Origin: Pristiophorus japonicus
Taxonomy: Eukaryota
Assembly (NCBI RefSeq): GCF_044704955.1
Contig: NC_091979.1
Span: forward strand, 304,296,001 to 304,360,000
DNA: 64,000 nucleotides
Direction of reading: 5' to 3'
How positions within the stretch are numbered: position 1 is the first letter of the stretch; every line of letters starts with the position of its first letter. The translations under genes and the position numbers were made by a program. The notes beneath the pieces are model-generated. The model was given only the letters and a program-made list of their open reading frames with translations, did no database searches and had not been told where the DNA came from. Positions 5,683-58,092 of this stretch are shown in pieces.

Positions 5683-6819
5683 ACAAGATAAAAGTTCACG
5701 GGGTTGGGGGTAATATATTAACATGGATAGAGGATTGGCAAACTAACAGAACAGAGAGTCGGGATAAATAGTTCATTCTCGGGTTGGCAATCAGTAACTA
5801 GTGGGGTGCCGCAGGGATCAGTGCTGGGACACCAATTATTTACAATCTATATTAACGACTGGAAGAAGGGTCTTGAGTGTAACGTAGCCAAGTTTGCTGA
5901 CAATACAAAAATGGGAGGAAAAGCAATGTGTGAGGACACAAAAAAATCTGCAAAAGGACATAGACAGGCGAAGAGAGTGGGCAAAAATTTGGCAGATGGA
6001 GTATAATGTCGGAAAGTGTGAGGTCATGCACTTTGGCAGAAAATATCAAAGAGCAAGTTATTATTTAAATGGAGAAAGATTGCAAAGTGTCGCAGTACAG
6101 TGGGACCTGGGGGTACTTATGCATGAAATACAAAAGGATAGTATGCAGGTACAGCAAGTGATCAGGAAGGCCAATGGTATCTTGGCCTTTATTGCAAAGG
6201 GGATGGAGTATAAAATCAGGGAAGTCTTGCTACAGCTGTACAGGGTATTGGTGAGGCCACACCTGGAATACTGCATGCAGTTTTGGTGTGCATATTTATG
6301 AAAGGATATACTTGCTTTGGAGGCAGTTCAGAGAAGGTTCACTAGGTTGATTCCGGAGGTGAGGGGGTTGACTTATGGAGGAAAGGTTGAGTAGTTTGGG
6401 CCTCTACTCACTGGAATTCAGAAGAATGAGAGGTGATCTTATTGGAACGTATAAGATTATGAGGGGGCTTGACAAGGTGGACGCAGAGAGGATGTTTCCA
6501 CTGATAGGGGAGACTAGAACTAGAGGGCCTGATCTTAGAATAAGAGGCCTCCCATTTAAAACTGAGATGAGGAGGAATTTCCTCTGAGGTTTGTAAATCT
6601 GTGGAATTCGCTGCCTCAGAGAGCTGTGGAAGCTGGGACATTGAATAAATATAAGACAGAAATAGAGAGTTTCTTAAACGATAAGGGGATAAGGGGTTAT
6701 GGGGAGCGGGCAGGGAAGTGGAGCTGAGACCATGATCAGATTAGCCATGATCATATTGAATGGCGGAGCAGGCTCGAGGGGCCGTATGGCCTACTCCGGC
6801 TCCTATTTCTTATGTTCTT
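5683..6819 (+). mobile_element. CR1 LINE, 5'-truncated, degraded RT C-terminus
   Basis: [25 protein letters not shown] and [14 protein letters not shown] motifs; TTCTTATG-type tail. Confidence 0.92.
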
Positions 6820-7117
6820 ATTTTTGTTCATTGGCTGGGCAACATACCCATTACAAGAGCAACTTGTTCATTGGCTAGGCAACATATCCATTCTGTGAAT
6901 TGGCTGGGCTAAACATCCATTACAACTACAATCTGCTCATTGTAATTGGTACTTGATCGAGCCAAATACAATCTTCTCGCTGGCTGGGTTAAACAGCCAT
7001 TACAGGTATTGGCAATCTGATTTGAGAAATGCCAATCAAACGTTGTAAAAGGTTTCAGGGTTTCAAACGATTTCAATCTATTTCAGCAACATATTTTACA
7101 ACTATTTTGTTGTATCT

Positions 7118-7270
7118 GTAAATCAATAAATCATTAAATCAAGTGCCCCCTAATTAATGGGGTGATGATGCACTCCGGTTCCTCCGGCGCCCACCTCTCG
7201 CGGAAGGCTGTGAGCGTACCGGTGGACACCGCGTGCTCCATCTCCAGGGATACCCTGGCTCGGATGTACA
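7118..7270 (-). mobile_element. Tx1-clade LINE 3' fragment
   Basis: Minus strand reads YIRARVSLEMEHAVSTGTLTAFRERWAPEEPECIITP, resembling a Tx1 ORF2 C-terminus, then a short T-rich UTR. Confidence 0.6.
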
Positions 7271-8081
7271 TATCTTACAGATGTTATATCGCAGTTGAGA
7301 GCTCACAAAGAAATGATTATTACACTCATCCTTGAGCCACAAAGAAATGATTTCAAGAGGACAGGAATGCCTGCAAGCTCTTGCTCAGCTTGTTTGATCA
7401 CAAGTGAGGTGACATTAACACGAGTCTCTCTGTGCTTCTATTTCTATTGTACCTTGCTCGTTACCATTACTAGGTTGTGTGTGATTGGAGTGGGCAGGCC
7501 AATCACACTGTTGACTCAGTTAAGTATATAACACTTGAGCTAACATTTGCTTGCAAAAACTTCAGTTTTAACTCACAGAAAGTAAAATACCAGATGCTGT
7601 GATTAATATCTTTTCAAATAGGTTTCAGATTACACTTTAGGAATTCAGCTGCTGAGCTATCTTGGAAAAAAAACGTGAAAAGGAGCAGTTTTGCACTGAC
7701 CCTACATTAGGTCACAACAACTCTCATTTATTGCAATATACTTTAAACCTTGCAGCTGAAGGCCAGATGCGATGAAATAGAAATAGCACAACAGAACTTT
7801 ATTTAATTCCATCAGTCTTAATTCGTAACAGCGCCTGTACAGCTTTTGAAGCTTCCAAACTTGTTATAATGTCTGATTTTCAGTTTTTTGATTCATTATT
7901 CTTTTAAGTGCTCTGAAACTGAATTTTATTCCTTATCAAATTGCATGAGAGTCAATCACATAGACCCAGATTTTCTTTCTGCTCCCCTCCGATTTCTCTG
8001 CAGATGTGGGCTGACATGTAGAACAAAGAATCGAATGAGGTAAATATGAGCTCCGACCTATTTCGCAGAACGTTTTATTAC

Positions 8082-8717
8082 TTATTATTCATTCACAGGC
8101 TGAGGGCGTCACTGGCAAGGCCAGCATTACAACAAAGTGGCTTGCGAGGCCACTTCACAGGACAGTTAAGAGTCAATCACATTGGTGTGGGTTAGAAGCC
8201 AGACCAGGTGAGGATGGCAAGTTTCCATCTCGGCCTTTTGGCTAAGATCTGCATAACTAACCTGACCAGCCACCATGACCTCCGGGTGGTTTCTCCCTGG
8301 TCAGGAAGGTATATGCTTACATTTTTGTAAACAGGAGGTGGGTGGGATGGCTTGACCCATCCACCTCCACGGAGGTGTGTGGGGGACCTGACCCATCCAC
8401 CTCCATGGCACGAACCTGGTATTGCAGTACTTCCAGGAACGGTGCAGTGGCTCTAGGCCTTTTGGCTAAGAGCATTGGCGCAGAGTGATCCTTGACTGGT
8501 GCAGGGTGACCTCTGGCGTTTGTGACTTGACAAAGAATTGGAAACGATTGGCTACGAATTTATATTTAAAAAAAAAGTTTCCATCCCTAAAGGATATTAG
8601 TCAACCAGTTAGGTTTTTATGACAGTCTGACAGTTTCATGGTCACTTTTACGGATACCAGCATTCTCACATTTTCCGGATTATCAGTCCAAGCCTCTGGA
8701 TCACTAATCCAATAATA
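8082..8717 (-). mobile_element. Old SINE with LINE-derived tail; host of the U2/U1 insertion
   Basis: CCAGACCAGGTGAGGATGGCAAGTTTCC|ATCCCTAAAGGATATTAG is contiguous once 8230-8585 is removed; tail related to 30560-30600. Confidence 0.6.
8230..8576 (+). mobile_element. U2/U1 snRNA-derived chimeric retroelement (SINEU-like)
   Basis: U2 stem-loop I TCGGCCTTTTGGCTAAGATC; U1-like 8253-8305; Sm-like ATTTTTG; duplicated SLIII-like hairpin; U2 SLIV ACCTGGTATTGCAGTACTTCCAGGAACGGTGCA; second SLI; A-tail; TSD AAGTTTCCATC at 8219-8229 and 8575-8585. Confidence 0.85.
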
Positions 8718-10067
8718 TCATCATCACAGGCAGTCCCTCAGAATCCAGGAAAACTTGCTTCCACTCAAAGTGTCTCAGGTGACTGAACAGTCGAATACGG
8801 GAATTACAGTCTCTGTCGCAGGTGGGGCAGTCGTTGGAGGAAAGGATGGGTGGGGAGTCTGGTTTACCGCACGCTCCTTCCGCTGTCTGCGCTTGTTTTC
8901 TGCATGCTCTCGGCGACGAGACTTGAGGTGCTCAGTGCCCTCCCGGATGCTCTTCCTCCACTTAGGACGGTCTTTGGCCAGGGATTCCCAGGTGTCGTTG
9001 GGAAATGTTGCACTTTATCAAGGAGGCTTTGAGGGTGTCCTTGAAACGTTTCCTCGGCCCACTTGGGGCTCGCTTGTCGTGTAGGAGTTCAGAGTAGAGC
9101 ACTTGCTTTGGGAGTCTTGTGTCAGGCATGCGGACAATGTGGCCCGCCCAACGGAACTGGTCGAATGTGGTCAGTGCTTCGATGCTGGGGATGTTAGCCT
9201 GGTCGAGGACGCTAATGTTGGTGTGTCTGTCCTCCCAGGGGATTTGCAGGATCTTGCGGCAGCATTGTTGGTGATATGTCTCCAGCGATTTGAGGTGTCT
9301 ACTGTATATGGTCCATGTTTCTGAGCCATACAAGAGGGCGGGTATCACTACAGCCCTGTGGACCATAAGCTTGGTGCCAGATTTGAGGGCCTGATCTTCA
9401 AAAACTCTCTTCCTCAGGCAGCCGAAGGCTGCGCTGGCACACTGGAGGCAGTGTTGAACCTCGTCATCGATGCCTGCCCTTGCTGATAAATAGGCTCCTG
9501 AGGTATGGAAAGTGGTCCACGTTGTCCAGGGCCGCACCGTGGATCTTGATGACGGGGGTGCAGTGCTGTGTGGTGGGGTCAGGTTGGTGGAGGACCTCTG
9601 TCTTACGGATGTTTAGTGTAAGGCCCATGCTTCGTACGCCTCGGTGAAGATGTTGACGATGACTTGAAGTTCAGTCTTTAAATGTGCGCAAACGCAAGCA
9701 TCATCCGCGTACTGTAGTTCGACGACAGAGGATGGGACGGTCTGGGATCTGGCCTGGAGGTGACGAAAGTTGAACAGGTTCCCACTGGTTCTAGTGTTTA
9801 GTTCCACTCCAACAGGGAGCTTGTTGAGTGTGAGGTGGAGCATTGCAGCGAGGAAGATCGAGAAGAGGGTTGGCGCGATGACGCAGTCCTGCTTGACCCC
9901 CGTCCGGACATTGATTGGGTCTGTGGTGGATCTGTTGGTAAGGATCACGGCCTGCATGTCGTTGTGGAGCAGGCAGAGGATGGCGACAAACTTTTGGGGG
10001 CAGCCGAAACGGAGGAGGAAGCTCCATAGTCCCTCGCGGTTAACAGTGTCAAAGGCCTTTGTAAGGT
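8718..10067 (-). mobile_element. RTE (BovB-like) LINE, 3' part, degraded; continues at 11996-12070
   Basis: LTKAFDTVNREGLW, ELQYADD and DTRLPKQVLYSEL motifs; (GAT)n tail at 8718. Confidence 0.92.
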
Positions 10068-10652
10068 ACAGAGAAACATAGAAACATAGAAAATAGGTGC
10101 AGGAGTAGGCCATTCGGCCCTTCTAGCCTGCACCACCATTCAATGAGTTTATGGCTGAACATGCATCTTCAGTACCCCATTCCTGCTTTCTCACCATATC
10201 CCTTGATCCCCCGAGTAGTAAGGACTTCATCTAACTCCTTTTTGAATATATTTAGTGAATTGGCCTCAACAACTTTCTGTGGTAGAGAATTCCACAGGTT
10301 CACCACTCTCTGGGTGAAGAAATTCCTCCTCATCTCGGTCCTAAATGGCTTCCCCCTTATCCTTAGACTGTGTCCCCTGGTTCTGGACTTCCCCAACATT
10401 GGGAACATTCTTCCTGCATCTAACCTGTCTAACCCCGCCAGAATTTTAAACGTTTCTATGAGGTCCCCTCTCATTCTTCTGAACTCCAGTGAATACAAGC
10501 CCAGTGGATCCAGTCTTTTTGATAGGTCAGTCCCGCCATCCCGGGAATCAGTCTGGTGAACCTTCGCTGCACTCCCTCAATAGCAAGAATGTCCTTCCTC
10601 AGGTTAGGAGACCAAAACTGTACACAATACTCCAGGTGTGGCCTCACCAAGG
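10068..10652 (-). mobile_element. CR1 LINE 3' fragment, left arm of a composite insertion
   Basis: [15 protein letters not shown]...ELDEVLTTRGIKGYGEKAGMGY; (TTTCTATG)n tail near 10070. Confidence 0.92.
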
Positions 10653-11454
10653 TCCATCAGTACGGTGGGTTCCATCAGTACGGCTGGGACGGCAATAATT
10701 TCCTCACCTTGGACATGGAGCACAGTGTGTGGGTCACCCGGTACACTGGGGGGAGATCACCAAGAACAGGTGGAACCAGGACAGGGTCGGACTGCTGCAG
10801 GACAAGGGTTACCTGGAGCAGGATTGCATCGAGTGGCTGAAGAAATACCTGAAAGCCGGAGCGAGAGATCTGAGAGCTGTTGCACCAGCCGTGTCCTTTA
10901 CTCGTCCGGGCGATGCTAAACAGCTGTCCTGTGTCACCATCGGGTTTTACCCTCAAGCCATCGAGGTGACTCTGCGGAGAGACGGAAAGTTCCTCGATGA
11001 GACCCAGTCCCAGTGGGATCCACCCCAACCACCACGGCATCTACCAGAACAGATGGACGGAGTTTGACCCCGAGGACCAGGGCAGGTTCTCCTGTGAGGT
11101 GGAGCAAGGCGGGCTCGAGGGGAATGTCGTGGTCTTTTACGTGTGGAAGCCTGGCTCCCAAGTCCCTATTATTGTCGGTGTTGTGTTTGAGCTTCTGGCG
11201 CTGCTCGTCATTCTCGCCATTGTGGCTGTCGTCATCAAAAAAAAAAGCGGGGAAGGAGAGCGGATACAATCCCGCGAAGACTTCTGATAAAGGGGAATCC
11301 CCATCAAACTCCTCCGTCCCGTGTCCCGCTGATACTCCAAGGACGTCAGTCCACAGTCAGTCAGCGTGGAGAGAGAATCGGGGAGGGTGGCTTTTCATCG
11401 CGGTGATGGCGATTGACTGACGGCTCTGCGTCTGTGACCCTGTTTAATTGTAAC
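10653..11454 (+). pseudogene. Processed MHC class I alpha chain pseudogene (shark UAA-like): partial alpha2, alpha3, TM, cytoplasmic tail and part of the 3'UTR, intronless, frameshifted
   Basis: GGFHQYGWDG...WGEITKNRW...GYLEQDCIEWLKKYL...LSCVTIGFYPQAIEVT...FSCEVE...hydrophobic TM...GYNPAKTSDKGES contiguous across normal exon junctions; frameshifts near 10740, 11010 and in the poly-A at ~11240. Confidence 0.93.
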
Positions 11455-19695: not shown

Positions 19696-22270
19696 TCATC
19701 ATCATAGGCAGTCCCTCGGAGTCGAGGATGACTTGCTTCCACTCTAAAAGTGAGTTCTCAGGTGACTGTACAGTCTAATGTGGGGCCTACAGTCTGTGTC
19801 ACAGGTGGGGCAAGGGTGGGTGGGGAGCCTGGCTTGCCGCACGCTCCTTCTGCTGTCTACGCTTGGTTTCTGCTTGTCCTCGACAATGGGACTCAAGATG
19901 CTCAGCGTCCTCCCGGATGCTCTTCCTCCACTTTAGGCGGTCTTGGGCCAGGGACTTCCCAGGTGTCGGTGGGGATTTTGCACTTTATCAAGGAGGCTTT
20001 GAGGGTGTCCTTGAAGCATTTCCTCTGCCCACCTGGGGCTCTTTTGCCGTGTCGAAGCTCCACATGGAGCGCTTGCTTTGGCAGTCTCGTGTCGGGCATG
20101 TGGACGATGTGACCCGCCCAACGGAGCTGATCAAGCGTGGTCAATGCTTCGATGCTGGGGCTGTTGGCCTCAGCGAGAACACCGATGTTGGTGTATCTAT
20201 CCTGCCAATGGATTTACAGGATCTTGCGGAGGCAGCGTTGGTGGTATTTCTCCAGTGCTTTGAGGTGCCTGCTGTATATAGTCTACGTCTCTGATTCATA
20301 TAAGAGGGCGGGTATCACTACTGCCCTATAGACCATAAGCTTACTGCTGGATTTGAGGTCCTGGTCTTCAAACATACGAAGCTATACCAGGTATTGGTGA
20401 GGCCACACCTGGAATACTGCATGCAGTTTTGGTTTGCATATTTATGAAAGGATATACGTGCTTTGGAGGCAGTTCAGAGAAGGTTCACTAGGCTGATTCC
20501 GGGGATGAGGGGGTTGACTTATGAGGAAAGTTTGAGTAGATTGGGCCTCTACTCATTGGAGTTCAGAAGAATGAGAGGTGATCTTATCGAAACATGTAAG
20601 ATTATGAGGGGGCTTGACAAGGTGGATGCAGAGAGGATGTTTCCACTGATTGGGGAGACTAGAACTAGAGGGCATGATCTTAGAATAACAGAGATGAGGA
20701 GGAATTTCTTCTGTGAGAGGGTTGTAAATGTGGAATTTGCTGCCTCGCAGAGCTGTGAAAGCTGGGACATTGAATAAATTTAAGACAGAAATAGACAGTT
20801 TCTTGAGCGATAAGGGGATAAGGGGTTATGGGGAGCAGGCAGGGAAGTGGAGTTGAGTCCATGATCAGATCAGCCATGATCTTATTGAATGGCGGAGCAG
20901 GCTCGAGGGGCCGTATGGCCTACTCATGTTCTTATGTAAACACTCTCTTCCTCAGGCGACCGAAGGCTGCACTGGCGCACTGACCTCGTTGTCAATGTCT
21001 GCTCTTGCTGACAGTAGGCTCCTGAGGTATGGGAAATGATCCACATTATCCAAGGCCTCATTGTGGGTTCTGATAATCGGGGGGCAGTGCTGTGTGGTGG
21101 GGTCAGGTTGGTAGAGTGTGCTTAGCGCAAGGCCCATGCTCGCGTACGCCTCGGTAAAGGTGTTGATAATGATTTGGAGTACGGCCTCCGATTGTGCGCA
21201 GATGGAAGCGTCGTCTGCATACTGTAGTTCAATGACAGAGGATGGGACGACTTTGGATCTGACTGACCTGGAGGCGGCAGAGGTTGAACAGATTCCCATT
21301 TGTTCTATAATTTAGCTCCACTCCAGCAGGGAGCTTGCTGAGGGTGAGATGAAGCATTGCAGCAAGGAAGATCGAAAAGAGCGTTGGCGCGATGACACAG
21401 CCCTGCTTGACCCCGGTCCAGACGTGGATTGGGTCTGTGGTGGATCCATTGGTCAGGATCACAGCTTGTATGTCGTCGTGGAGCAAACAGAGGATGGTGA
21501 AAAACTTTTGAGGGCAGCCGAAACAGAGGAGGATGCTCCTTAATGCCTCACCGTTGACAGTGTCAAAGGCTTTTGTGAGGTCAAAGGCGGCCATGTACAA
21601 GAGTTGGTGCTGTTCCCTACATTTCTCTTGTAGTTGTCGCGCGGTGAAGATCATGTCCGTTGTACCCTCAATGGACGGAATCTGCATTGCGACTCTCGGA
21701 GGAGCTCTTCAGCCACAGGGAGAAGACGATTGAGGAGGATTCTTGCAATGACTTTCCCTGTGTCCGACAGCAGGGAGATTCCTCTGTAGTTACCTCAGTC
21801 AGACTTGTCCTCTTTTTTGAAGATGGTCACGATTAAGGTATTTCTGAGACCTTCTGGCATGCTCTCCTCCTTCCAGATAAGAGAAATGAGGTCATGTATT
21901 TTGCCAATAGTGCTTCTCCGCCACGTTTCAGTGCTTCGGCGGGAATTCCATCTGCTCCTGTTGCCTTGTTATTCTTCAGCTGACAGATGGCCTTTTCTAC
22001 CTCGTGCAGGGCTGGGGTTGTGCTGAGATGGTGGCGGGTAGCATGCTGCGGGATGGAGTCGAGGACACTCGCGTCGAAGGCAGTCTCTGTTAAGGAGATC
22101 TTCGAAATGCTCATTCCAACGGGCACTGACTGCCCCTCTGTCCTTGATGGGTACCTCACCGTTCTTGACCCTCAGTGGCCTTGGGTGGTTGAGCCGTAAG
22201 TGGTCTTGACTGAGCTGAAGAATCCACGTACATCGTGGTTGTCGGTTAACTGTTGGATCTTCTGTGCTAT
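19696..22270 (-). mobile_element. RTE LINE, degraded, interrupted by a CR1
   Basis: GTTDMIFTARQLQEKCREQ, FDLTKAFD and ELQYADD motifs; (GAT)n tail at 19696. Confidence 0.9.
20375..20937 (+). mobile_element. CR1 LINE 3' fragment nested in RTE
   Basis: LVRPHLEYC and [14 protein letters not shown]; flanked by an AAACA duplication. Confidence 0.9.
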
Positions 22271-26860: not shown

Positions 26861-29800
26861 CACTGCCTCCATGGAGTTGATTTTGCTATCAAGAACGAGC
26901 TGGTCGACCGCCTCAGAGACTCCCCCTGTGGGAATAGCGAGCGTCTCATGACTCTCCGATGCACCCGATCCTGGAACCAGTGTGCCACAGTCATCACTGC
27001 ATACGCCCCAACACTCGATGCAACAGATGAGGCCAAAGAGGGTTTTTACTCCAGCCTCGAAAAATCCCGACGGGCGACAAGCTGATCCTCCTCAGTGACT
27101 TCAACGCCAGGTTCAGCAAGTACACAGACCTCTGGGGAGGCGTGATCGGCAGAGAGGGGGTAGGGAAACCCAACTCCAGCAGTACCCTACTCCTGACAAA
27201 ATGCCTGGAGCACGACCTCGTCATCACCAACACCTTGTTCCGCCAGAGGGACAAATACAAGGCATCATGGCAACACCCTCACTCCAAACATTGGCACCTG
27301 CTCGACTAGGTCATCGTTCGAGCCAGGGATCGCAAGGATGTGCGCATCACCTGCGCCATGACAGGAGCGGACGGCTGCTGGATGGACCACCGCCTAAGCC
27401 GATCCATCATCAACATCAATATAGCCCCAAAGTGGTGACGGCAGCAGAAGCAGTGCCGCAAAAGTCAATGCCGGGGCACTCAAAGATCCAGCTTAGAGAG
27501 CCCTATACAGCCAGCGCCTCACTGCTAACCTCGCGACCCTTGATGACCCCGAGACGCAGAATGCCCACAGCTTGGTCTGCCCTCCAGGCCACCATAACCA
27601 GTGCCTGCGAAGAGACGCTCAGTCACTCAACCAGGAAACACCAGGATTGGTTTCATGAAAATGACCAGGAGATCCAAGAGCTAATAAATTGCAAGCACAG
27701 GGCATTTCTGAACCTAAAACAACCCAACTCGAGAGCAGCAAAGCAGCTTTACAGACGGCTTAAGGCCGAGGTCCAATAAAAAACCCTCGACCTAAAGAAT
27801 AGATGGTGGGTGGAGAAAGCACAGGAGATACAGCAAGCTGGCCAACAGCCATGATGTGCGAGGATTCTTCATCGCAGTCAAGGCCACCTACGGTCCAAAC
27901 ACCCAAGGCCCCACCCCACTGCTGGCCAAGAACGGGGAGACACTCATCAAGGACACCGAGGCATCAGGACCATTGGAAGAAGCACTTCGAAGATCTCCTT
28001 AACAGAGACTCTGCCTTTGACTCGAGTGTCCTCGACTCCATCCTGAGATGGTAGCATGCTACTCGCCACCATCTCAGCAAAACCCCAGCCCTGCACGAGG
28101 TAGAAAAGGCCATCCACCAGTTCAAGAACAACAAGGCCACGGGAGCGAATGGAATCACCGCCAAGGCACTAAAGTATGGTGGAAAGGCACTATTGGCATG
28201 AATGCATGACCTCATCTCTCTCATTTGGAAGGAGGAGAGAATGCCGGGAGATCTCAGAGATGCAGTGATCGTGACATCTTTAAAAAAGGGGACAAGTCCG
28301 ACTGCGGCAACTACAGAGGAATCTCCCTGTTATCAGCCACTGGGAAAGTCATCGCTAGAGTCCTCCTCAACCGTCTTCTCCCTGTGGCTGAGGAGCTCCT
28401 CTTGGAGTCACAGTGTGGATTTGGTTCTCTATGGGGTACAACGGACATGATTTTTATAGCGCGACAGCTGCAAGAAAATTGTAGGGAATAGCTTCAACCG
28501 TTGTACATGGCCTTCTTTGATCTTACAAAGAGTAGGGCCTTGGGTGTTTGAGCCGTAGGTGATCTTGATTGCGCTGAAGAATCCTCGCACATCATGGCTG
28601 TCGGCCAGCTGTTGTATCTCCTGTGCTTTCTCCACCCACCATCTGTTCTTTAGGTCGCGGATTTTTTGTTGGACCTCAGCCTTAAGCCGCCTGTAAAGCT
28701 GCTTTGCTGCTCCAGAGTTGGGTTGTTTTAGGCTCTGAAATGCCCTGCGCTTGTGATTTATTAGCTCTTGGATCTCCTGGTCATTCTCATCAAGCCAGTC
28801 CTGGAATTTCCTGGTTGAGTGACCGAGCGTCTCTTCGCAGGCACTGGTTATGGGTGGCCTGGAGGGCAGACCAAGCTGTGGGCAAAGGCCTTTGACACTG
28901 TCAACCGTGAGGGACTATGGAGCGTCCTCCTCCGTTTCGGCTGTCCCCAAAGATTTGTCACCATCCTCCGCCTGCTCCTTGACGACATACAAGCCGTGAT
29001 CCAGACCAACAGATCCACCACAGACCCAATCCACGTCCGGACCGGGATCAAGCAGGGCTGCGCCATCACGCCAAGCCTCTTCTCGATCTTCCTCACTGAC
29101 ATGCTCCACCTCACACTCAACAATCTCCCCGCTGGAGTGGAACTAAACTACAGAACCAGTGGGAACCTGTTCAACCTTCGTCGCCTCCAGGCCAGATCCA
29201 AGACCGTCCCAACCTCTGTCGTCGAACTACAGTACATGGACGACGCCTGCGTCTGTGCACATACAGAAGCAGAACTCCAAGTCATAGTTAACATCTTCAC
29301 TGAGGCGTATGAAAGCATGGGCCTTACGCTAAACATTTGTAAGACAAAAACCCTTCACCAACCTGACCCCCAGTCATCAAGATCTGCGGCGCGGCCCTGG
29401 ACAACGTGACCATTTTCCATACCTCGAGAGGCTATTATCAGCGAGGGCAGACATTGACGCGAGGTTCAACACTGCCTCCAGTGCGCCAGCGCAGCCTTCG
29501 GCCGCCTGAGGAAAAGAGTGTTTGAAGATCAGGTCCTCAAATCTACCACCAAGCTCATGGTCTACAGGGCTGTAGTAATACCCGCCCTCCTGTATGGCTC
29601 AGACGTGAACCATATACTGTAGACACCTCAAATCGCTGGAGAAACACCACCACGATGTCTCCGCAAGATCCTGCAAATCTCCTGGGAGGACAGGCGCATT
29701 AACGTTAGCGTCCTCGATCAAGCCAACACCCCCAGCATCGAAGCACTGACCACACTCGACCAGCTCCGCTGGGCGGGCCACTTTGTTTGCATGCCGACAC

Positions 29801-30193
29801 GAGACTCCCTAAGCAAGCGCTCTACTCGGAACTCCTACACGGCAAGCGAGCCTCAGGTGGGCAGAGCAAACGTTTCAAGGACGCCCTCAAAGCCTCCTTG
29901 ATAAAATGCAACATCCCCACCGACACCTGGGAGTCCCTGGCCAAAGACAGCCCTAATTGGAGGAAGAGCATCCGGGAGGGCACTGAGCACCTCGAGTCTC
30001 GTCACTGAGAGAATGCAGAAAACAAGCGCGGGCAGCGGAAGGAGCGTGTCCGTCCCACCACCCTTTTCTTCAACCATTGTGTGTCCCACCTGTGACAGAG
30101 ACTGTAATTCCCGTATTAGTCACCTAAGAACTCACTTTTAGAGTGGAAGCAAGTCTTCCTCGATTTTGAGGGACTGCCTATGATAATGATGAT
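26861..30193 (+). mobile_element. RTE LINE (APE endonuclease part + RT), degraded, with internal inverted segment
   Basis: AYAPT, DFNAR, HPHSKHWHLLD, KKGDKSDCGNYRGISLL and KAFDTVNREGLW; GAGGGACTGCCTATGATAATGAT tail. Confidence 0.92.
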
Positions 30194-47669: not shown

Positions 47670-48957
47670 TTAACACAACACAACGTAGGAACAACTGCAA
47701 AGAATAAACATGTCCATGCGCAACAGTGGTCGCAGAGCCCTCAGGCAACAGTAATTGAAGCGTTTACGGATGAGCTGCTGGCGCAATGCTCGAGCAATCG
47801 TTAAAGGAGCACGATGGACGGTCCTCCTCCGACCTCGTGCTCCGGCATCAGTCATTTGTATGCTTTCTTGATCGTCGTCATCATCCACATCCTGCTCTTC
47901 CGTAATACTATCATCATGCACTGGAGCCTCACGTTGGTCTTCTGGTTCCACTACCAGCTCCTGCTGCCTCATGATGGCTAAGTTATGCAGCATGCAGCAC
48001 ACAACAGTGAACTGACCGACAATCTGAGGAGAGTACAGCAAGTGGCCTCCAGAATGGTCCAGGCATCGGAAACGCTGTTTCAAGATGCCAATGGTCCTCT
48101 CAATGATGCTGCGCGTCGCAATGTACGCCATGTTGTATTGACGGTCAGCTTCTGTCCATGTCACGCGTAGCGGACGTCATGAGCCAGGTGGTCTGGCCGT
48201 ACCCTTTGTCTCCCAGCAGCCAGCTCTGCCCTTCTGGCTGCTGCTCAAACATGTCAGATATAACGCTGTGGCGTAGGATGAACGCATCATGGGTGCTGCC
48301 AGGGTATCTCGCATCGGCTGACATGATGTGCTGCTTGTCGTCACACACATTGATGAAATGGAAACCTTTTCTATTCCTGTACTGCTCTGAATCCTCCACT
48401 GGTGCTCGCAAGGCTATGTGGGTACAAACCAATGCAGCCCTGTACCTTTGGGAAGCCAGAAAGCCTGAAGAAGCCCACAGCCCTCTCATGGATCGCTGTG
48501 CGGTCATTGGGAACTTGATGAAGTCATTCCTCCGCGCATACAGTGCAGCCGTGACCTGGTAAACGCAGGCGTGTATTGCACGTTGAGAGATGGCGCACAC
48601 ATCTCCAGTTGTAGTCTGAAACGATCCCGAGGCATAGAAGGCAAGTGCAGCTGTTACCCTCACTTCAACAGTCGAGGCAGTTGGTGTTCTGCTTCTGGGC
48701 TGCAAATCTGCTCTCAGCATATCACAGATCTCAGCGACAACTTCTCTGTGGAAACGCAGCCTTTTGACACAATCAGCCTCGCTCGTGTCCAGGTACGAGC
48801 GCCTGGTTCGATATTGCCGATGTGGGTAAGACCTCCTGCCCATCAGCCTACGGGCTATGACGGTCCTGGTGCGGTGAGCTCCAATCAATTCTCTCTTATG
48901 CAGTGAATTGATGGAGAACCATTGCATAATCCGTGGTGTTGACAATGCAGCACCCAT
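47670..48957 (-). pseudogene. Harbinger (HARBI1-type DDE) transposase pseudogene
   Basis: ALAFYASGSFQ, CTHIAL (preceding Asp lost), NRKGFHFIN, YPGSTHDAFIL, LLGDKGY, RSIIERTIGILKQRFRCLD, CCMLHNL; several frameshifts. Confidence 0.93.
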
Positions 48958-52010: not shown

Positions 52011-54077
52011 AACCAGTTAAAAATTTACACATGAATATAATAATAAGCCACATGGTGAAGCTGCTGGGAAGGTGGAAGCTCACCCATTGTCTGTTTAAAT
52101 ATTTATTTGAAAGGATGTTCAGGCAAAAATACACATACATACCCTGTATAATTAATGCATAACAAACTTGTGTTTCAAAACAGGATTTTAAAAGTGCTTT
52201 GCTTTATACTGCGAGCTTGTGGCAAACTAGACAGGAAATAGCACAATAACGGCTATTGAGCTCATTATCCTGCACTAACTCAGGCTACAGATACCACACC
52301 TAGGTTAATGACATATGTGCAACAATTTATCTAGATTACAAAATATAATGGGCTGAACAGTACCTTGTATAGTTACTAGATTCACAGGCTTGCTGGATGT
52401 TCTAAATCCCTTAAGCACACTGACTAAGCATTAATATTGCTGTTCTATAATTCGAGGGACCATGGTTTCTTGCAAAAGCATCCTGGAAGGAAAAAAAAAA
52501 AAAATCGCTAGAGATTGAGCCTGGGAGAAGCCAACGTTTAAGGATTCTGCTCTAATTTTGGCCGCAAGATGTAATTTAGGACCTCCTCCTGTTTTGCTGG
52601 GTAAAGGCACATATGGTTTGAAGTTGTACAGACCAAGTCAAACTGCCGAGCCCTGGTCTATGATAAGTTAGATCATGTCAGCTGCGACACATTGGAGCAC
52701 TGCAATTCAAAGTCCCCGAGATACAGAGTGGAAAAATTGATCGAATCGCACTCCTCTTTGATTCCTTGTGATACATGTTGATGCTTTGCGAGAGTCTGTG
52801 GCTGTTGGGTAAAGTAGGGATAGAATTCGACAAGACCAGTTACTTTTGCACAATGAATATTTGTTCTTTGGTTGTGGGTAACACTGGCAATTGCCAATCC
52901 TTAGTTGCCCAGAGGCTGGAGCGGAGCTGACTTCTTCGAACTCCAGAGGGCATTAAGCGTCAAAAGCATGTAGTGTGGACTAGATTGTCATTTAGGCCAG
53001 ACTGAGGATAGTGGGTAGGTAGATCCCCTCCCTGAAGGGCACCAATAAACCAGTTGGTGTTTTGAACCCTTCAAATTGAACCTGTTGAGTTTTTTTGAAA
53101 ACTTATTTTATAAAAGCCATCACATTCTTTAAAGCCACACTAGGTCAATTTCATGAAGACATCCAAGTGTTGAATGTAGCTGGAGAGCTGCCAATGATCA
53201 GTTGATCTGCTACTTAATCTTTCAGATAATATGACGTCTCATAGAATCGTATAGCATAGAAGGAGGCCATTCGACCCATTATGCCTGAGCCGGCTTAAAC
53301 AAAAAAAGACTTGCATTTCTATAGTGCCTTTCACGATCTCAGGTCTTCCCAAAGTGCTTCACAGCTAATAACATACTTTTGAAGTTGTAACGTAGGATAC
53401 AGCAAGAAAAGAGAACTAGTACACAGGTACAATTTATGCTTTCAAGAGGGAGCTGGACAGGTTCTTGTCTGGGGCAGAGATCGCATCATAAAAAAGGCAG
53501 GTCAGTGTTCTCTCCTGGGCTGGTTTTGATCACCTGAGAGTCTTGGAGAGAAATTCTTCCAGAATATTTTTCTCCGTACTGGCCCTGTTTTTTCTCTCTC
53601 CCATGAGATTACATGGCTGCGAAGGGAAGGGGGCGGTGAGGAGGGAAGGAGGAAGTGTTTAGCCAGGAGGCTTCAGCCATCGTGATTGTGGAGCAGGCCT
53701 GATGGACCAGAGTGCCTTTTTTTGCCTGTCAATTTTGTATGTTCATCAAGACTGGTAGTTGACTTGTCTATTAACTGGGCCTAGTATAAGGAAGTATCTC
53801 GTTCTGTTCATCAGCACAAAGTGGATTTTTCTTGGAAAATTTGATCCTGATTTTGACAATTTTCCCCTCAATCAGCCAACGTTACTTTCAGCTTTCGTGA
53901 GGTTTTGATGGGCAGTGTATGTAATTCCATTCTGCCGTCTAGTGCAGTTCGTTCATTTATCTGTTCCACATACAGTTGAACTGAAAAGTCACGTGGTGGA
54001 TGCATTTGGTATTTACCAGGACAAAGACAAACATTTTGTTCCTGCAGCACAGATTTAATTTCAACCCCACCCTGAAT

Positions 54078-57938: not shown

Positions 57939-58092
57939 TCATCATCATCATAGCAGTCCCTCGGAATCGAGGAAGACTTGCTTCTATTCTTAAAATGAGT
58001 CCTTAGGTGGCTGAACAGTCCAATACGAGAACCGCAGTCCCTGTCACAGGTGGAACAGATAGTCGTTGAGGGAAAGGGAGGGTGGGACTGGG
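57939..58092 (-). mobile_element. RTE 3' end
   Basis: CSTCDRDCGSRIGLFSHLRTH zinc-finger-like end; (GAT)n tail. Confidence 0.85.

What the first reader, a model, noticed from the sequence alone, without database searches (positions are those of the whole stretch)
8219..8585. Retroposed chimera of U2 and U1 snRNA modules: candidate new shark snRNA-derived SINE or copy of an unknown Sm-class RNA
Seen, in order: U2 stem-loop I (8230-8249); a U1-like 5' end and SLI (ATAACTAACCTG...ACCATGACCTCCGGGTGGTTTCTCCC versus U1 ATACTTACCTG...ACCATGATCACGAAGGTGGTTTTCCC) where the U2 branch-recognition/SLII region should be; Sm-like ATTTTTG (8321-8327); two tandem SLIII-like hairpins (8334-8368, 8371-8404); near-perfect U2 SLIV (8414-8446); a second U2 SLI (8450-8473); a ~95-nt unique tail; A-tail; and an 11-bp TSD AAGTTTCCATC that splits an older SINE. 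Known: U1/U2-headed SINEs (SINEU) were described in crocodilians, and snRNA promoters are external, so copies cannot self-transcribe. Inference: this is not a simple U2 pseudogene but the TPRT copy of a ~350-nt modular RNA made from a master locus with an snRNA promoter, moved by L1/Tx1-type machinery. I do not know of such a family described in sharks.
Basis: partly seen in the sequence, partly recalled or inferred. Interest (0 to 1): 0.9.

Follow-up and report, generated by a model that had tools for sequence, protein, structure and literature searches.

The report
Shark retroposon built from snRNA pieces
A 345-base dead retroposed insertion made mostly of U2 spliceosomal RNA pieces, with a probable U1 piece in the middle, sits in a shark-type genome and looks like one copy of a SINEU-type mobile element, a design published so far only for crocodilians.

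Summary
The anatomy is real. Rfam calls 8222-8452 a U2 snRNA (49.6 bits, cut-off 46) whose central part is replaced. A second U2 stem-loop I, a 94-nt unique tail and an A9 run follow. Perfect 11-bp duplications bracket the element, and a paralogue of the host repeat (52850-53063) crosses the site uninterrupted, so this is a true retroposed insertion and not a gene.

The "U1" block (8253-8305) is only weakly U1-like. The Rfam U1 model is silent at E<=10.

I could not fetch a second copy. The scan has noted this design before on other DNA of the same genome: at least 13 unchecked notes of 250-720-letter U2/U1 poly(A) mosaics. That is my only evidence for a family.

Best reading: a dead copy of an undescribed elasmobranch SINEU-like family, assembled by 5' additions of snRNA pieces and moved by a poly(A)-type LINE. 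The architecture parallels crocodilian SINEU-1C, SINEU-2 and SINEU-3. The master locus, its promoter and the LINE partner are untested.

The parts
8219..8229 (+). Left target-site duplication AAGTTTCCATC. Its last bases overlap what the U2 model aligns to U2 nt 1-8, which suggests microhomology at the 5' junction.
8230..8249 (+). U2 stem-loop I (U2 nt 9-28). The U2 sequence breaks off after ...GATC (nt 28).
8250..8252 (+). 3-nt linker (TGC) between the U2 head and the U1-like block.
   Evidence: direct reading
8253..8305 (+). U1-like block: a 5'-end-like ATAACTAACCTG followed by a long hairpin. The 9-bp outer stem pairs 8261-8269 with 8297-8305, with an inner CCACC/GGTGG stem. It occupies the place of U2 nt 29 to about 80.
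   Evidence: no Rfam U1 hit; collinear similarity, 5 of 20,000 shuffles; fold
8306..8333 (+). U2 pre-Sm linker and Sm site (ATTTTTG at 8321-8327).
8334..8405 (+). U2 SLIII-derived hairpin, tandemly duplicated (36-nt period, 86% alike). Copy 1 has a perfect 13-bp stem.
8409..8446 (+). U2 stem-loop IV.
8452..8473 (+). Second U2 head (U2 nt 7-28, 2 mismatches), joined almost directly to the 3' end of the first U2 body. It also ends at U2 nt 28.
8474..8567 (+). Unique 94-nt 3' body. It has no Rfam match, no relative in the window and no AATAAA/ATTAAA signal.
8568..8576 (+). A9 tail. The last two A are shared with the TSD.
8575..8585 (+). Right target-site duplication AAGTTTCCATC.
8060..8218 (.). 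Left half of the older host repeat that was split by the insertion.
8586..8716 (.). Right half of the host repeat.

Best explanation
8230-8574 is one dead, retroposed copy of a composite, non-coding, snRNA-derived retroposon of the SINEU type in an elasmobranch genome.

Modules, 5' to 3':
1. U2 head (nt 9-28).
2. A roughly 53-nt block that is probably U1 5' end plus SLI.
3. The U2 3' half: Sm site, duplicated SLIII, SLIV.
4. A second U2 head (nt 7-28).
5. A 94-nt unique body.
6. A short A tail.

Shown: the RNA was copied into the genome by target-primed reverse transcription. The evidence is the A tail abutting an 11-bp TSD and a paralogous host repeat with an unbroken site.

Inferred:
- The basal unit was 'U2 head + 94-nt body + A(n)'. 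Further snRNA pieces were stacked on its 5' end by template switching of the reverse transcriptase, as Kojima (2015, PMC4494074) deduced for SINEU-1 and SINEU-2.
- The resulting RNA then amplified as a unit.
- It was moved by a poly(A)-recognising LINE of the Tx1 or L1 type.
- Three T4-T5 runs inside the element make pol III transcription unlikely, so it is transcribed by pol II from outside the element.
- Keeping SLI, the Sm site, SLIII and SLIV while losing the branch-site/SLII region may give the RNA snRNP-like stability and cytoplasmic-nuclear traffic without interfering with splicing.
For: - U2 model match above Rfam's cut-off, with the centre replaced.
- Second U2 head.
- Exact 11-bp TSD and A9 tail.
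- Uninterrupted paralogous site at 52850-53063.
- Strong fold of 8222-8412: -92.4 kcal/mol, z -6.8.
- T4/T5 runs at 8236, 8322 and 8460, and no poly(A) signal in the tail.
- Collinear U1 similarity.
- Parallels in PMC4494074. SINEU-1C/H are deduced to have arisen by adding U2 sequence onto a U1-headed SINEU-1 whose base already carries a U2 head, giving U2, U1, U2 and body in order. SINEU-2 is U1 5' part plus U2 3' part. SINEU-3 is U2 nt 1-32 plus a middle 83 nt after an internal deletion of about 50 bp, nearly the same segment that is replaced here. All have poly(A) and roughly 10-bp TSDs.
- The TSD matches the first 11 bases of the SINEU-3 target AGGTTCCCATCAGCAT at 9/11. Matches with 2 or fewer mismatches occur about 20 times per 128 kb of this window, or about 1.6e-4 per fixed register.
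- Family status: at least 13 other first-reader notes of the same design in the same genome, four with follow-ups (s1-874479, s1-874486, s1-874736, s1-876458) whose summaries read them as SINEU-type. In all, 79 notes fit the words 'U2 target'. These are unchecked AI notes.
Against: - I saw only one copy. None of my own searches produced a second one, so the family claim rests on notes I could not verify.
- The Rfam U1 model does not recognise the central block.
- No LINE with a matching 3' end is in the window.
- CpG observed/expected in the element is 0.40, no higher than the window's 0.53, so youth rests only on the intact TSD and A run.
- The U2 heads end at nt 28, not at the Keno/Utopia site between nt 38 and 39 (PMC4640811). 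Simple co-transcription from a LINE-invaded U2 gene therefore does not explain them.
Confidence: 0.65

Rival explanations
1. One-off chimeric retropseudogene. During a single LINE-mediated reverse transcription, the enzyme switched templates several times (tail RNA, then U2 5' end, then a U2 RNA, then U1, then U2). The product is unique, not a family.
For: Such snRNA chimeras with poly(A) and TSDs are known from L1 activity in human (Buzdin 2002 and Garcia-Perez 2007, as summarised in PMC4494074). No second copy was found by any search I could run.
Against: It needs at least three switches, two of them onto internal template positions, and both U2 heads break at the same U2 position (nt 28). 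This scan noted the same U2-U1-U2-tail-poly(A) layout with similar lengths at many other places of the genome.
Confidence: 0.15
2. Retro-copy of a real, expressed variant Sm-class snRNA: a U2 scaffold carrying a U1-like 5' module. Its read-through or polyadenylated transcript was captured by a LINE.
For: The Sm site is flanked by stem-loops. SLI is intact and SLIV nearly so, the SLIII stem is perfect, and the fold is strong with z -6.8.
Against: The U2 branch-site recognition sequence is absent. The RNA continues 120 nt past SLIV into a second U2 head and a tail, unlike any snRNA. No RNA run holding the stretch was listed. This locus has no promoter context, since its flanks are a host repeat.
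Confidence: 0.07
3. This rival concerns a sub-claim only and does not exclude the best explanation. The central block 8253-8305 is not U1-derived. It is a hairpin of other or unknown origin, so the element would be a pure U2 mosaic.
For: No Rfam U1 match at E<=10. Other places in the window reach a combined score of 31 against 35. One earlier follow-up (s1-874736) describes its copy as built from U2 pieces only.
Against: The match is collinear with near-correct spacing and 5 of 20,000 shuffles. There is also a precedent: roughly 55-nt U1 heads (5' end plus SLI) joined to U2 in SINEU-2, whose diverged head string AGCACCGTGACCACG... resembles AGCCACCATGACCTCCG... here.
Confidence: 0.3

Closest known systems
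SINEU-1 subfamilies C/H of crocodilians (Kojima 2015, PMC4494074)
   Same: Short non-coding retroposon with U2 and U1 pieces stacked at the 5' end in the deduced order U2, U1, U2, followed by a unique 3' body of unknown origin, poly(A) and roughly 10-bp TSDs. No internal promoter, and oligo-T runs inside.
   Different: Different host (elasmobranch). This element also carries the U2 3' half (Sm site, duplicated SLIII, SLIV) between the U1-like block and the second U2 head. Sequence homology of the 3' bodies could not be tested, because no Repbase or Dfam was available.
SINEU-2 (crocodile and gharial)
   Same: A U1 5' part of about 55 nt joined to a U2 3' part. The U1 head has diverged in the SLI loop region.
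   Different: Here an extra U2 SLI precedes the U1-like block, and a second U2 head plus a 94-nt body follow the U2 3' end.
SINEU-3 (crocodilians)
   Same: A U2 lacking about 50 internal nt (keeps nt 1-32 and a middle 83 nt), nearly the segment missing here (nt 29 to about 80). The first 11 bases of its usual target AGGTTCCCATCAGCAT match the TSD here at 9/11.
   Different: In SINEU-3 the gap is a plain deletion, whereas here it is filled by a 56-nt hairpin block. SINEU-3 targets a Mariner family, whereas this host repeat is unclassified.
L1-type template-switch chimeras and poly(A)-tailed U1/U2 retropseudogenes of mammals
   Same: snRNA sequence at the 5' end, another RNA at the 3' end, poly(A) and TSD.
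   Different: Those are independent single events with varied junctions. Here the same layout is reported repeatedly in one genome (scan notes, unchecked).
Keno (Tx1 clade) and Utopia (NeSL clade) U2-targeting LINEs (PMC4640811)
   Same: They link LINEs with U2 sequence. Some crocodilian Tx1-Mar LINEs carry U1 or U2 heads.
   Different: Their insertion site leaves U2 from nt 39 downstream, whereas both U2 heads here stop at nt 28. No LINE ORF or matching LINE tail lies in this window.

Membership tests
SINEU (snRNA-headed SINEs, Kojima 2015) | 5' region derived from U1 or U2 snRNA | tested here: met
   Rfam U2 49.6 bits against a cut-off of 46 over 8222-8452. Second U2 head at 8452-8473.
SINEU (snRNA-headed SINEs, Kojima 2015) | Short (<500 bp) non-coding retroposon with 3' poly(A) and TSD | tested here: met
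   345 nt, A9 tail, exact 11-bp TSD. Unbroken paralogous site. The longest ORFs are 52 aa or shorter.
SINEU (snRNA-headed SINEs, Kojima 2015) | Many copies with the same internal structure, meaning a retrotransposition unit rather than independent chimeras | tested here: inconclusive
   No second copy in the window. Only unchecked scan notes of the same design elsewhere in the genome.
SINEU (snRNA-headed SINEs, Kojima 2015) | Mobilised by Tx1 LINEs, shown by shared target preference | tested here: inconclusive
   One TSD only. It matches the SINEU-3 target start at 9/11, about 1.6e-4 per register. No Tx1 copy in the window was compared.
SINEU (snRNA-headed SINEs, Kojima 2015) | Sequence homology to crocodilian SINEU consensus bodies | not testable with these tools
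   No Repbase or Dfam library was available.
Plain U2 processed pseudogene | Collinear copy of U2 snRNA | tested here: not met
   The U2 model deletes its central positions and inserts 56 nt. SLIII is duplicated, and 120 extra nt follow SLIV.
Functional U2 snRNA gene | Branch-site recognition sequence, SLII, and an external promoter with 3' box | tested here: not met
   U2 nt 29 to about 80 are absent. The flanks are the two halves of a host repeat plus the TSD.
U1 snRNA-derived sequence (block 8253-8305) | Match to the Rfam U1 covariance model | tested here: not met
   No U1 hit at E<=10 on 8248-8335, nor at E<=1 on 7000-10000. A weaker collinear similarity exists.

The most novel reading that the evidence does not exclude
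This is a copy of a fairly young, abundant SINEU-type family in sharks that arose independently of the crocodilian one. It keeps the same U2 modules (SLI, Sm site, SLIII/IV), drops the same U2 segment, and inserts at a target motif like that of crocodilian Tx1-Mar/SINEU-3. That would point to a recurrent partnership between Tx1-type LINEs and Sm-class snRNAs across jawed vertebrates. It would also offer intact master copies from which the unsolved question of how promoter-less snRNA-headed SINEs are transcribed could be answered.
Probability: 0.3. Interest if true: 0.7.

Novelty: new member of a known kind. Interest (0 to 1): 0.5.

Why it matters
SINEU is the only SINE class whose head comes from pol II snRNA genes, and in the papers I could search it is reported only from crocodilians. 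Its transcription mechanism is an admitted open question (PMC4494074).

A second, independent family in cartilaginous fish would show that snRNA-headed retroposons are a recurrent outcome and not a crocodilian oddity. Copies with intact TSDs would make the search for master loci practical: either copies with a PSE and 3' box, or copies sitting in transcribed targets.

The shared loss of U2 nt 30-80, with SLI, the Sm site and SLIII/IV retained, also hints at which snRNP features such RNAs exploit.

Tried and rejected
   - One exception was outside my control. The 'relatives' look-up, which I limited to 8219-8412, was widened by the tool itself to 6719-9912. It returned nothing.
2. The look-up of sequencing runs listed four DNA runs of one coded organism holding 0.80 of the words, three small runs holding 0.14-0.27, one run of a second organism holding 0.10, and no RNA run. 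Without laying reads, this says nothing about copy number.
4. The search for homologous proteins with the 71-codon open frame 8198-8410(-), intended to catch ORFs called on other copies, found no candidate.
5. The metagenome scan with a 22-mer across the U2/U1-like junction gave one hit, in a bacterial contig (L001), with no similarity beyond the 22-mer. It is a chance match.
6. Gapped-pattern scans of genome contigs and viral contigs gave 0 hits. These collections hold no shark DNA, so this says nothing.
7. The search of earlier findings by sequence was blank.
8. Rejected hits: the Rfam minus-strand 'Prion_pknot' hits (31.2 and 14.7 bits, both below the cut-off of 39) are an echo of the GGTGG-rich hairpins, and the U8 hit (11 bits, E 4) is noise.
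9. My first 'dinucleotide-like' shuffle mixed poorly and is discarded. The proper Altschul-Erickson shuffle is.
10. The sigma-70 and terminator scan is irrelevant to a vertebrate locus.
11. CpG content gave no age signal.
12. ARAGORN found no tRNA-like head in the host repeat.
13. Co-transcription from a Keno/Utopia-invaded U2 gene was considered as the source of the U2 heads. It fits poorly, because that site lies between nt 38 and 39 and not at nt 28.

Full report
**What is there**

The stretch 8219-8585 reads as follows:
- An 11-bp direct repeat AAGTTTCCATC at 8219-8229 and 8575-8585. It is an exact match in the self-BLAST.
- A 345-nt insert between the repeats that ends in nine A (8568-8576).

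Rfam's U2 model matches 8222-8452 end to end (model 1-192). The score is 49.6 bits, above the curated cut-off of 46, with E 3.5e-8 on 3 kb and 7.4e-7 on the whole window. It is the only family in the 64 kb to reach its cut-off.

The alignment shows these U2 parts:
- U2 nt 9-28 (stem-loop I), letter-perfect, at 8230-8249.
- The Sm site ATTTTTG at 8321-8327.
- SLIII at 8334 onward.
- SLIV at about 8409-8446.

The model's central positions, roughly U2 nt 29-80, are deleted and 56 foreign nt are inserted. SLIII is tandemly duplicated: TRF gives 8334-8405, period 36, 2.0 copies, 86% matches.

Right after the U2 3' end comes a second U2 stem-loop I. The U2 model places it at 8452-8471 (15.1 bits). 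The 20-mer TCGGCCTTTTGGCTAAGATC matches 8454-8473 with two mismatches, where 0 matches are expected by chance in the window.

The 94 nt that follow (8474-8567) match no Rfam family and nothing else in the window. They contain no AATAAA or ATTAAA.

**It is an insertion**

I rebuilt the pre-insertion site from the two flanks and searched the window with nhmmer. A diverged paralogue of the host repeat lies at 52850-53063 (E 1.7e-7). It runs straight across the junction and carries a single copy of the TSD homologue.

The element therefore landed in an older interspersed repeat and duplicated 11 bp. The flanks offer no snRNA promoter context, so this locus is a dead copy and not a gene.

I could not show that the host repeat is a SINE. 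ARAGORN and Rfam see no tRNA-type head.

**The 'U1' block**

The Rfam U1 model gives none. There was no hit at E<=1 on 3 kb and none at E<=10 on the 88-nt piece alone.

A weaker signal exists. The 5' end matches 8 of 9, and SLI matches 22 of 26 with three indels.
- The combined score of 35 is the highest of all 71-nt windows of the 64 kb on both strands. The best unrelated place scores 31.
- It is reached by 5 of 20,000 true dinucleotide shuffles.

The strings were picked after the sequence had been seen, so the real significance is lower.

The block folds into a long hairpin, with a 9-bp outer stem (8261-8269 pairing with 8297-8305) and an inner CCACC/GGTGG stem. The 5'-splice-site-recognising letters are partly buried in that stem.

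I put U1 ancestry at about 70%. The main reason beyond the alignment is precedent. Crocodilian SINEU-2 has a U1 head of about 55 nt (5' end plus SLI) fused to U2 sequence, and its diverged SLI string resembles the one here.

**Structure**

The stretch 8222-8412 folds at -92.4 kcal/mol against -63.6 +/- 4.3 for shuffles, z -6.8. The fold contains SLI, the long central hairpin and two SLIII hairpins, the first with a perfect 13-bp stem.

The second head plus tail is only marginally structured, z -2.0.

**Is it a family?**

This is the decisive question, and I could not answer it with my own data.
- The window holds no second copy (blastn with word size 7, nhmmer).
- A protein-space trick, using the 71-codon open frame of the minus strand, found nothing.
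- Pattern scans of microbial and viral collections gave one chance hit and two blanks.

What remains is the scan's own notebook. In the same genome, on other pieces, at least 13 first-reader notes describe poly(A)-tailed U2/U1 (or U2-only) mosaics of 250-720 letters, most of them 289-354. Four follow-up agents, in their summaries, read their copies as SINEU-type and also could not count copies. In all, 79 notes fit the words 'U2 target' among about 400 windows. Two further notes report a Tx1 LINE with a U2 head and U2 fragments behind a Tx1 tail.

These are unchecked AI notes. Even so, the same layout recurring at many loci is hard to reconcile with independent multi-step chimeras, and it moved my odds for a family from about 35% to about 65%.

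**Comparison with what is known**

Kojima (2015, PMC4494074) defined SINEU in crocodilians as follows:
- Short poly(A) retroposons with U1- or U2-derived heads.
- No internal promoter.
- Oligo-T runs that argue against pol III.
- TSDs of about 10 bp.
- Repeated 5' addition of U1 or U2 pieces by template switching.
- Mobilisation by Tx1-Mar LINEs, inferred from a shared target preference.

Three parallels stand out:
1. SINEU-1C/H are deduced to have arisen by adding U2 sequence onto a U1-headed SINEU-1 whose base (SINEU-1J) already has a U2 head. That gives the order U2, U1, U2, unique body. The module order here is the same, with a U2 3' half added.
2. SINEU-2 is U1 5' part plus U2 3' part, which is the middle of this element.
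3. SINEU-3 keeps U2 nt 1-32 plus a middle 83 nt after losing about 50 nt. That is almost exactly the segment replaced here.

A fourth point is a lead only. The usual SINEU-3 target begins AGGTTCCCATC, and the TSD here is AAGTTTCCATC (9/11). Matches with two or fewer mismatches occur about 20 times per 128 kb of this window, or about 1.6e-4 per fixed register.

Both U2 heads here stop at U2 nt 28. That is not the Keno/Utopia insertion site between nt 38 and 39 (PMC4640811), so simple co-transcription from an invaded U2 gene does not explain them.

Whole-word searches for SINEU, and for SINEs with snRNA-derived heads, found no report outside crocodilians in the held library. Repbase and Dfam could not be consulted.

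**Mechanism, with its status**

Shown:
- Reverse transcription primed at a nicked target, giving the A tail and TSD.
- Insertion into a repeat.

Inferred:
- A basal 'U2 head + 94-nt body + A(n)' RNA gained snRNA pieces at its 5' end by template switching. The junction of a complete U2 3' end to the start of another U2 head is what a jump from the 5' end of one template to the 3' end of a U2 RNA would leave.
- The composite then amplified as a unit.
- Transcription is by pol II from an outside promoter. T4-T5 runs at 8236, 8322 and 8460 would stop pol III.
- The helper is a poly(A)-type LINE (Tx1 or L1).
- Retention of the Sm site with SLI, SLIII and SLIV may give snRNP-like stability and a cytoplasmic phase in which LINE proteins are met.

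**Age**

The TSD copies are identical and the A run is pure, which suggests modest age. CpG observed/expected is 0.40 in the element against 0.53 for the window, so CpG gives no support for youth.

**Host genome**

An MHC class I fragment in the window (10699-11064) is far closer to PDB 6LUP than to any other solved class I chain: 1.5e-28 against 1.8e-14 for the next. From memory, 6LUP is a shark class I molecule.

**Limits to state plainly**

I worked beside them and give no letters of them.
- The 'relatives' look-up widened itself over them without my asking.

**Verdict**

This is a real, cleanly bounded retroposed snRNA mosaic. It is most likely one member of an undescribed elasmobranch SINEU-like family, which makes it a new member of a known kind. 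The U1 component is probable but unproven, and family size, master locus and LINE partner are open.

Noticed in passing
window 52850-53063: Diverged paralogue of the host repeat that was split by the insertion. It crosses the insertion site uninterrupted (nhmmer E 1.7e-7).
   Followed up: yes
window 8717-9100; copies at 29819-30190 (-), 19696-20052 (+), 57941-58086 (+): A repeat of about 380 bp just right of the host repeat occurs three more times in the window at 78-84% identity. Probably a LINE 3' part; not classified.
   Followed up: no
window 9613-10113 (-) and 28819-29409 (+): ORF fragments with reverse-transcriptase domains (Pfam RVT_1, E 3e-12 and 1.4e-17), so LINE remnants. The clade was not determined, and neither shares sequence with the element's tail.
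   Followed up: partly
window 48145-48957 (-): 270-aa ORF with a DDE_Tnp_4 domain (E 8.9e-14): a Harbinger/PIF-type transposase remnant.
   Followed up: no
window 10699-11064 (+): Open frame encoding MHC class I alpha-2/alpha-3-like sequence. The best solved relative, PDB 6LUP (E 1.5e-28), is far ahead of mammalian class I chains, which fits an elasmobranch origin of the window.
   Followed up: partly
window 8219-8229 against the SINEU-3 target in PMC4494074: The TSD AAGTTTCCATC matches the first 11 bases of the crocodilian SINEU-3/Tx1-Mar target AGGTTCCCATCAGCAT at 9 of 11. This is a possible shared endonuclease preference, based on a single observation.
   Followed up: partly
L001 2264-2285 (metagenome contig Ga0255775_1000094): An exact 22-mer match to the U2/U1-like junction lies inside what reads as a bacterial coding region. 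There is no similarity beyond the 22-mer, so it is a chance hit.
   Followed up: yes
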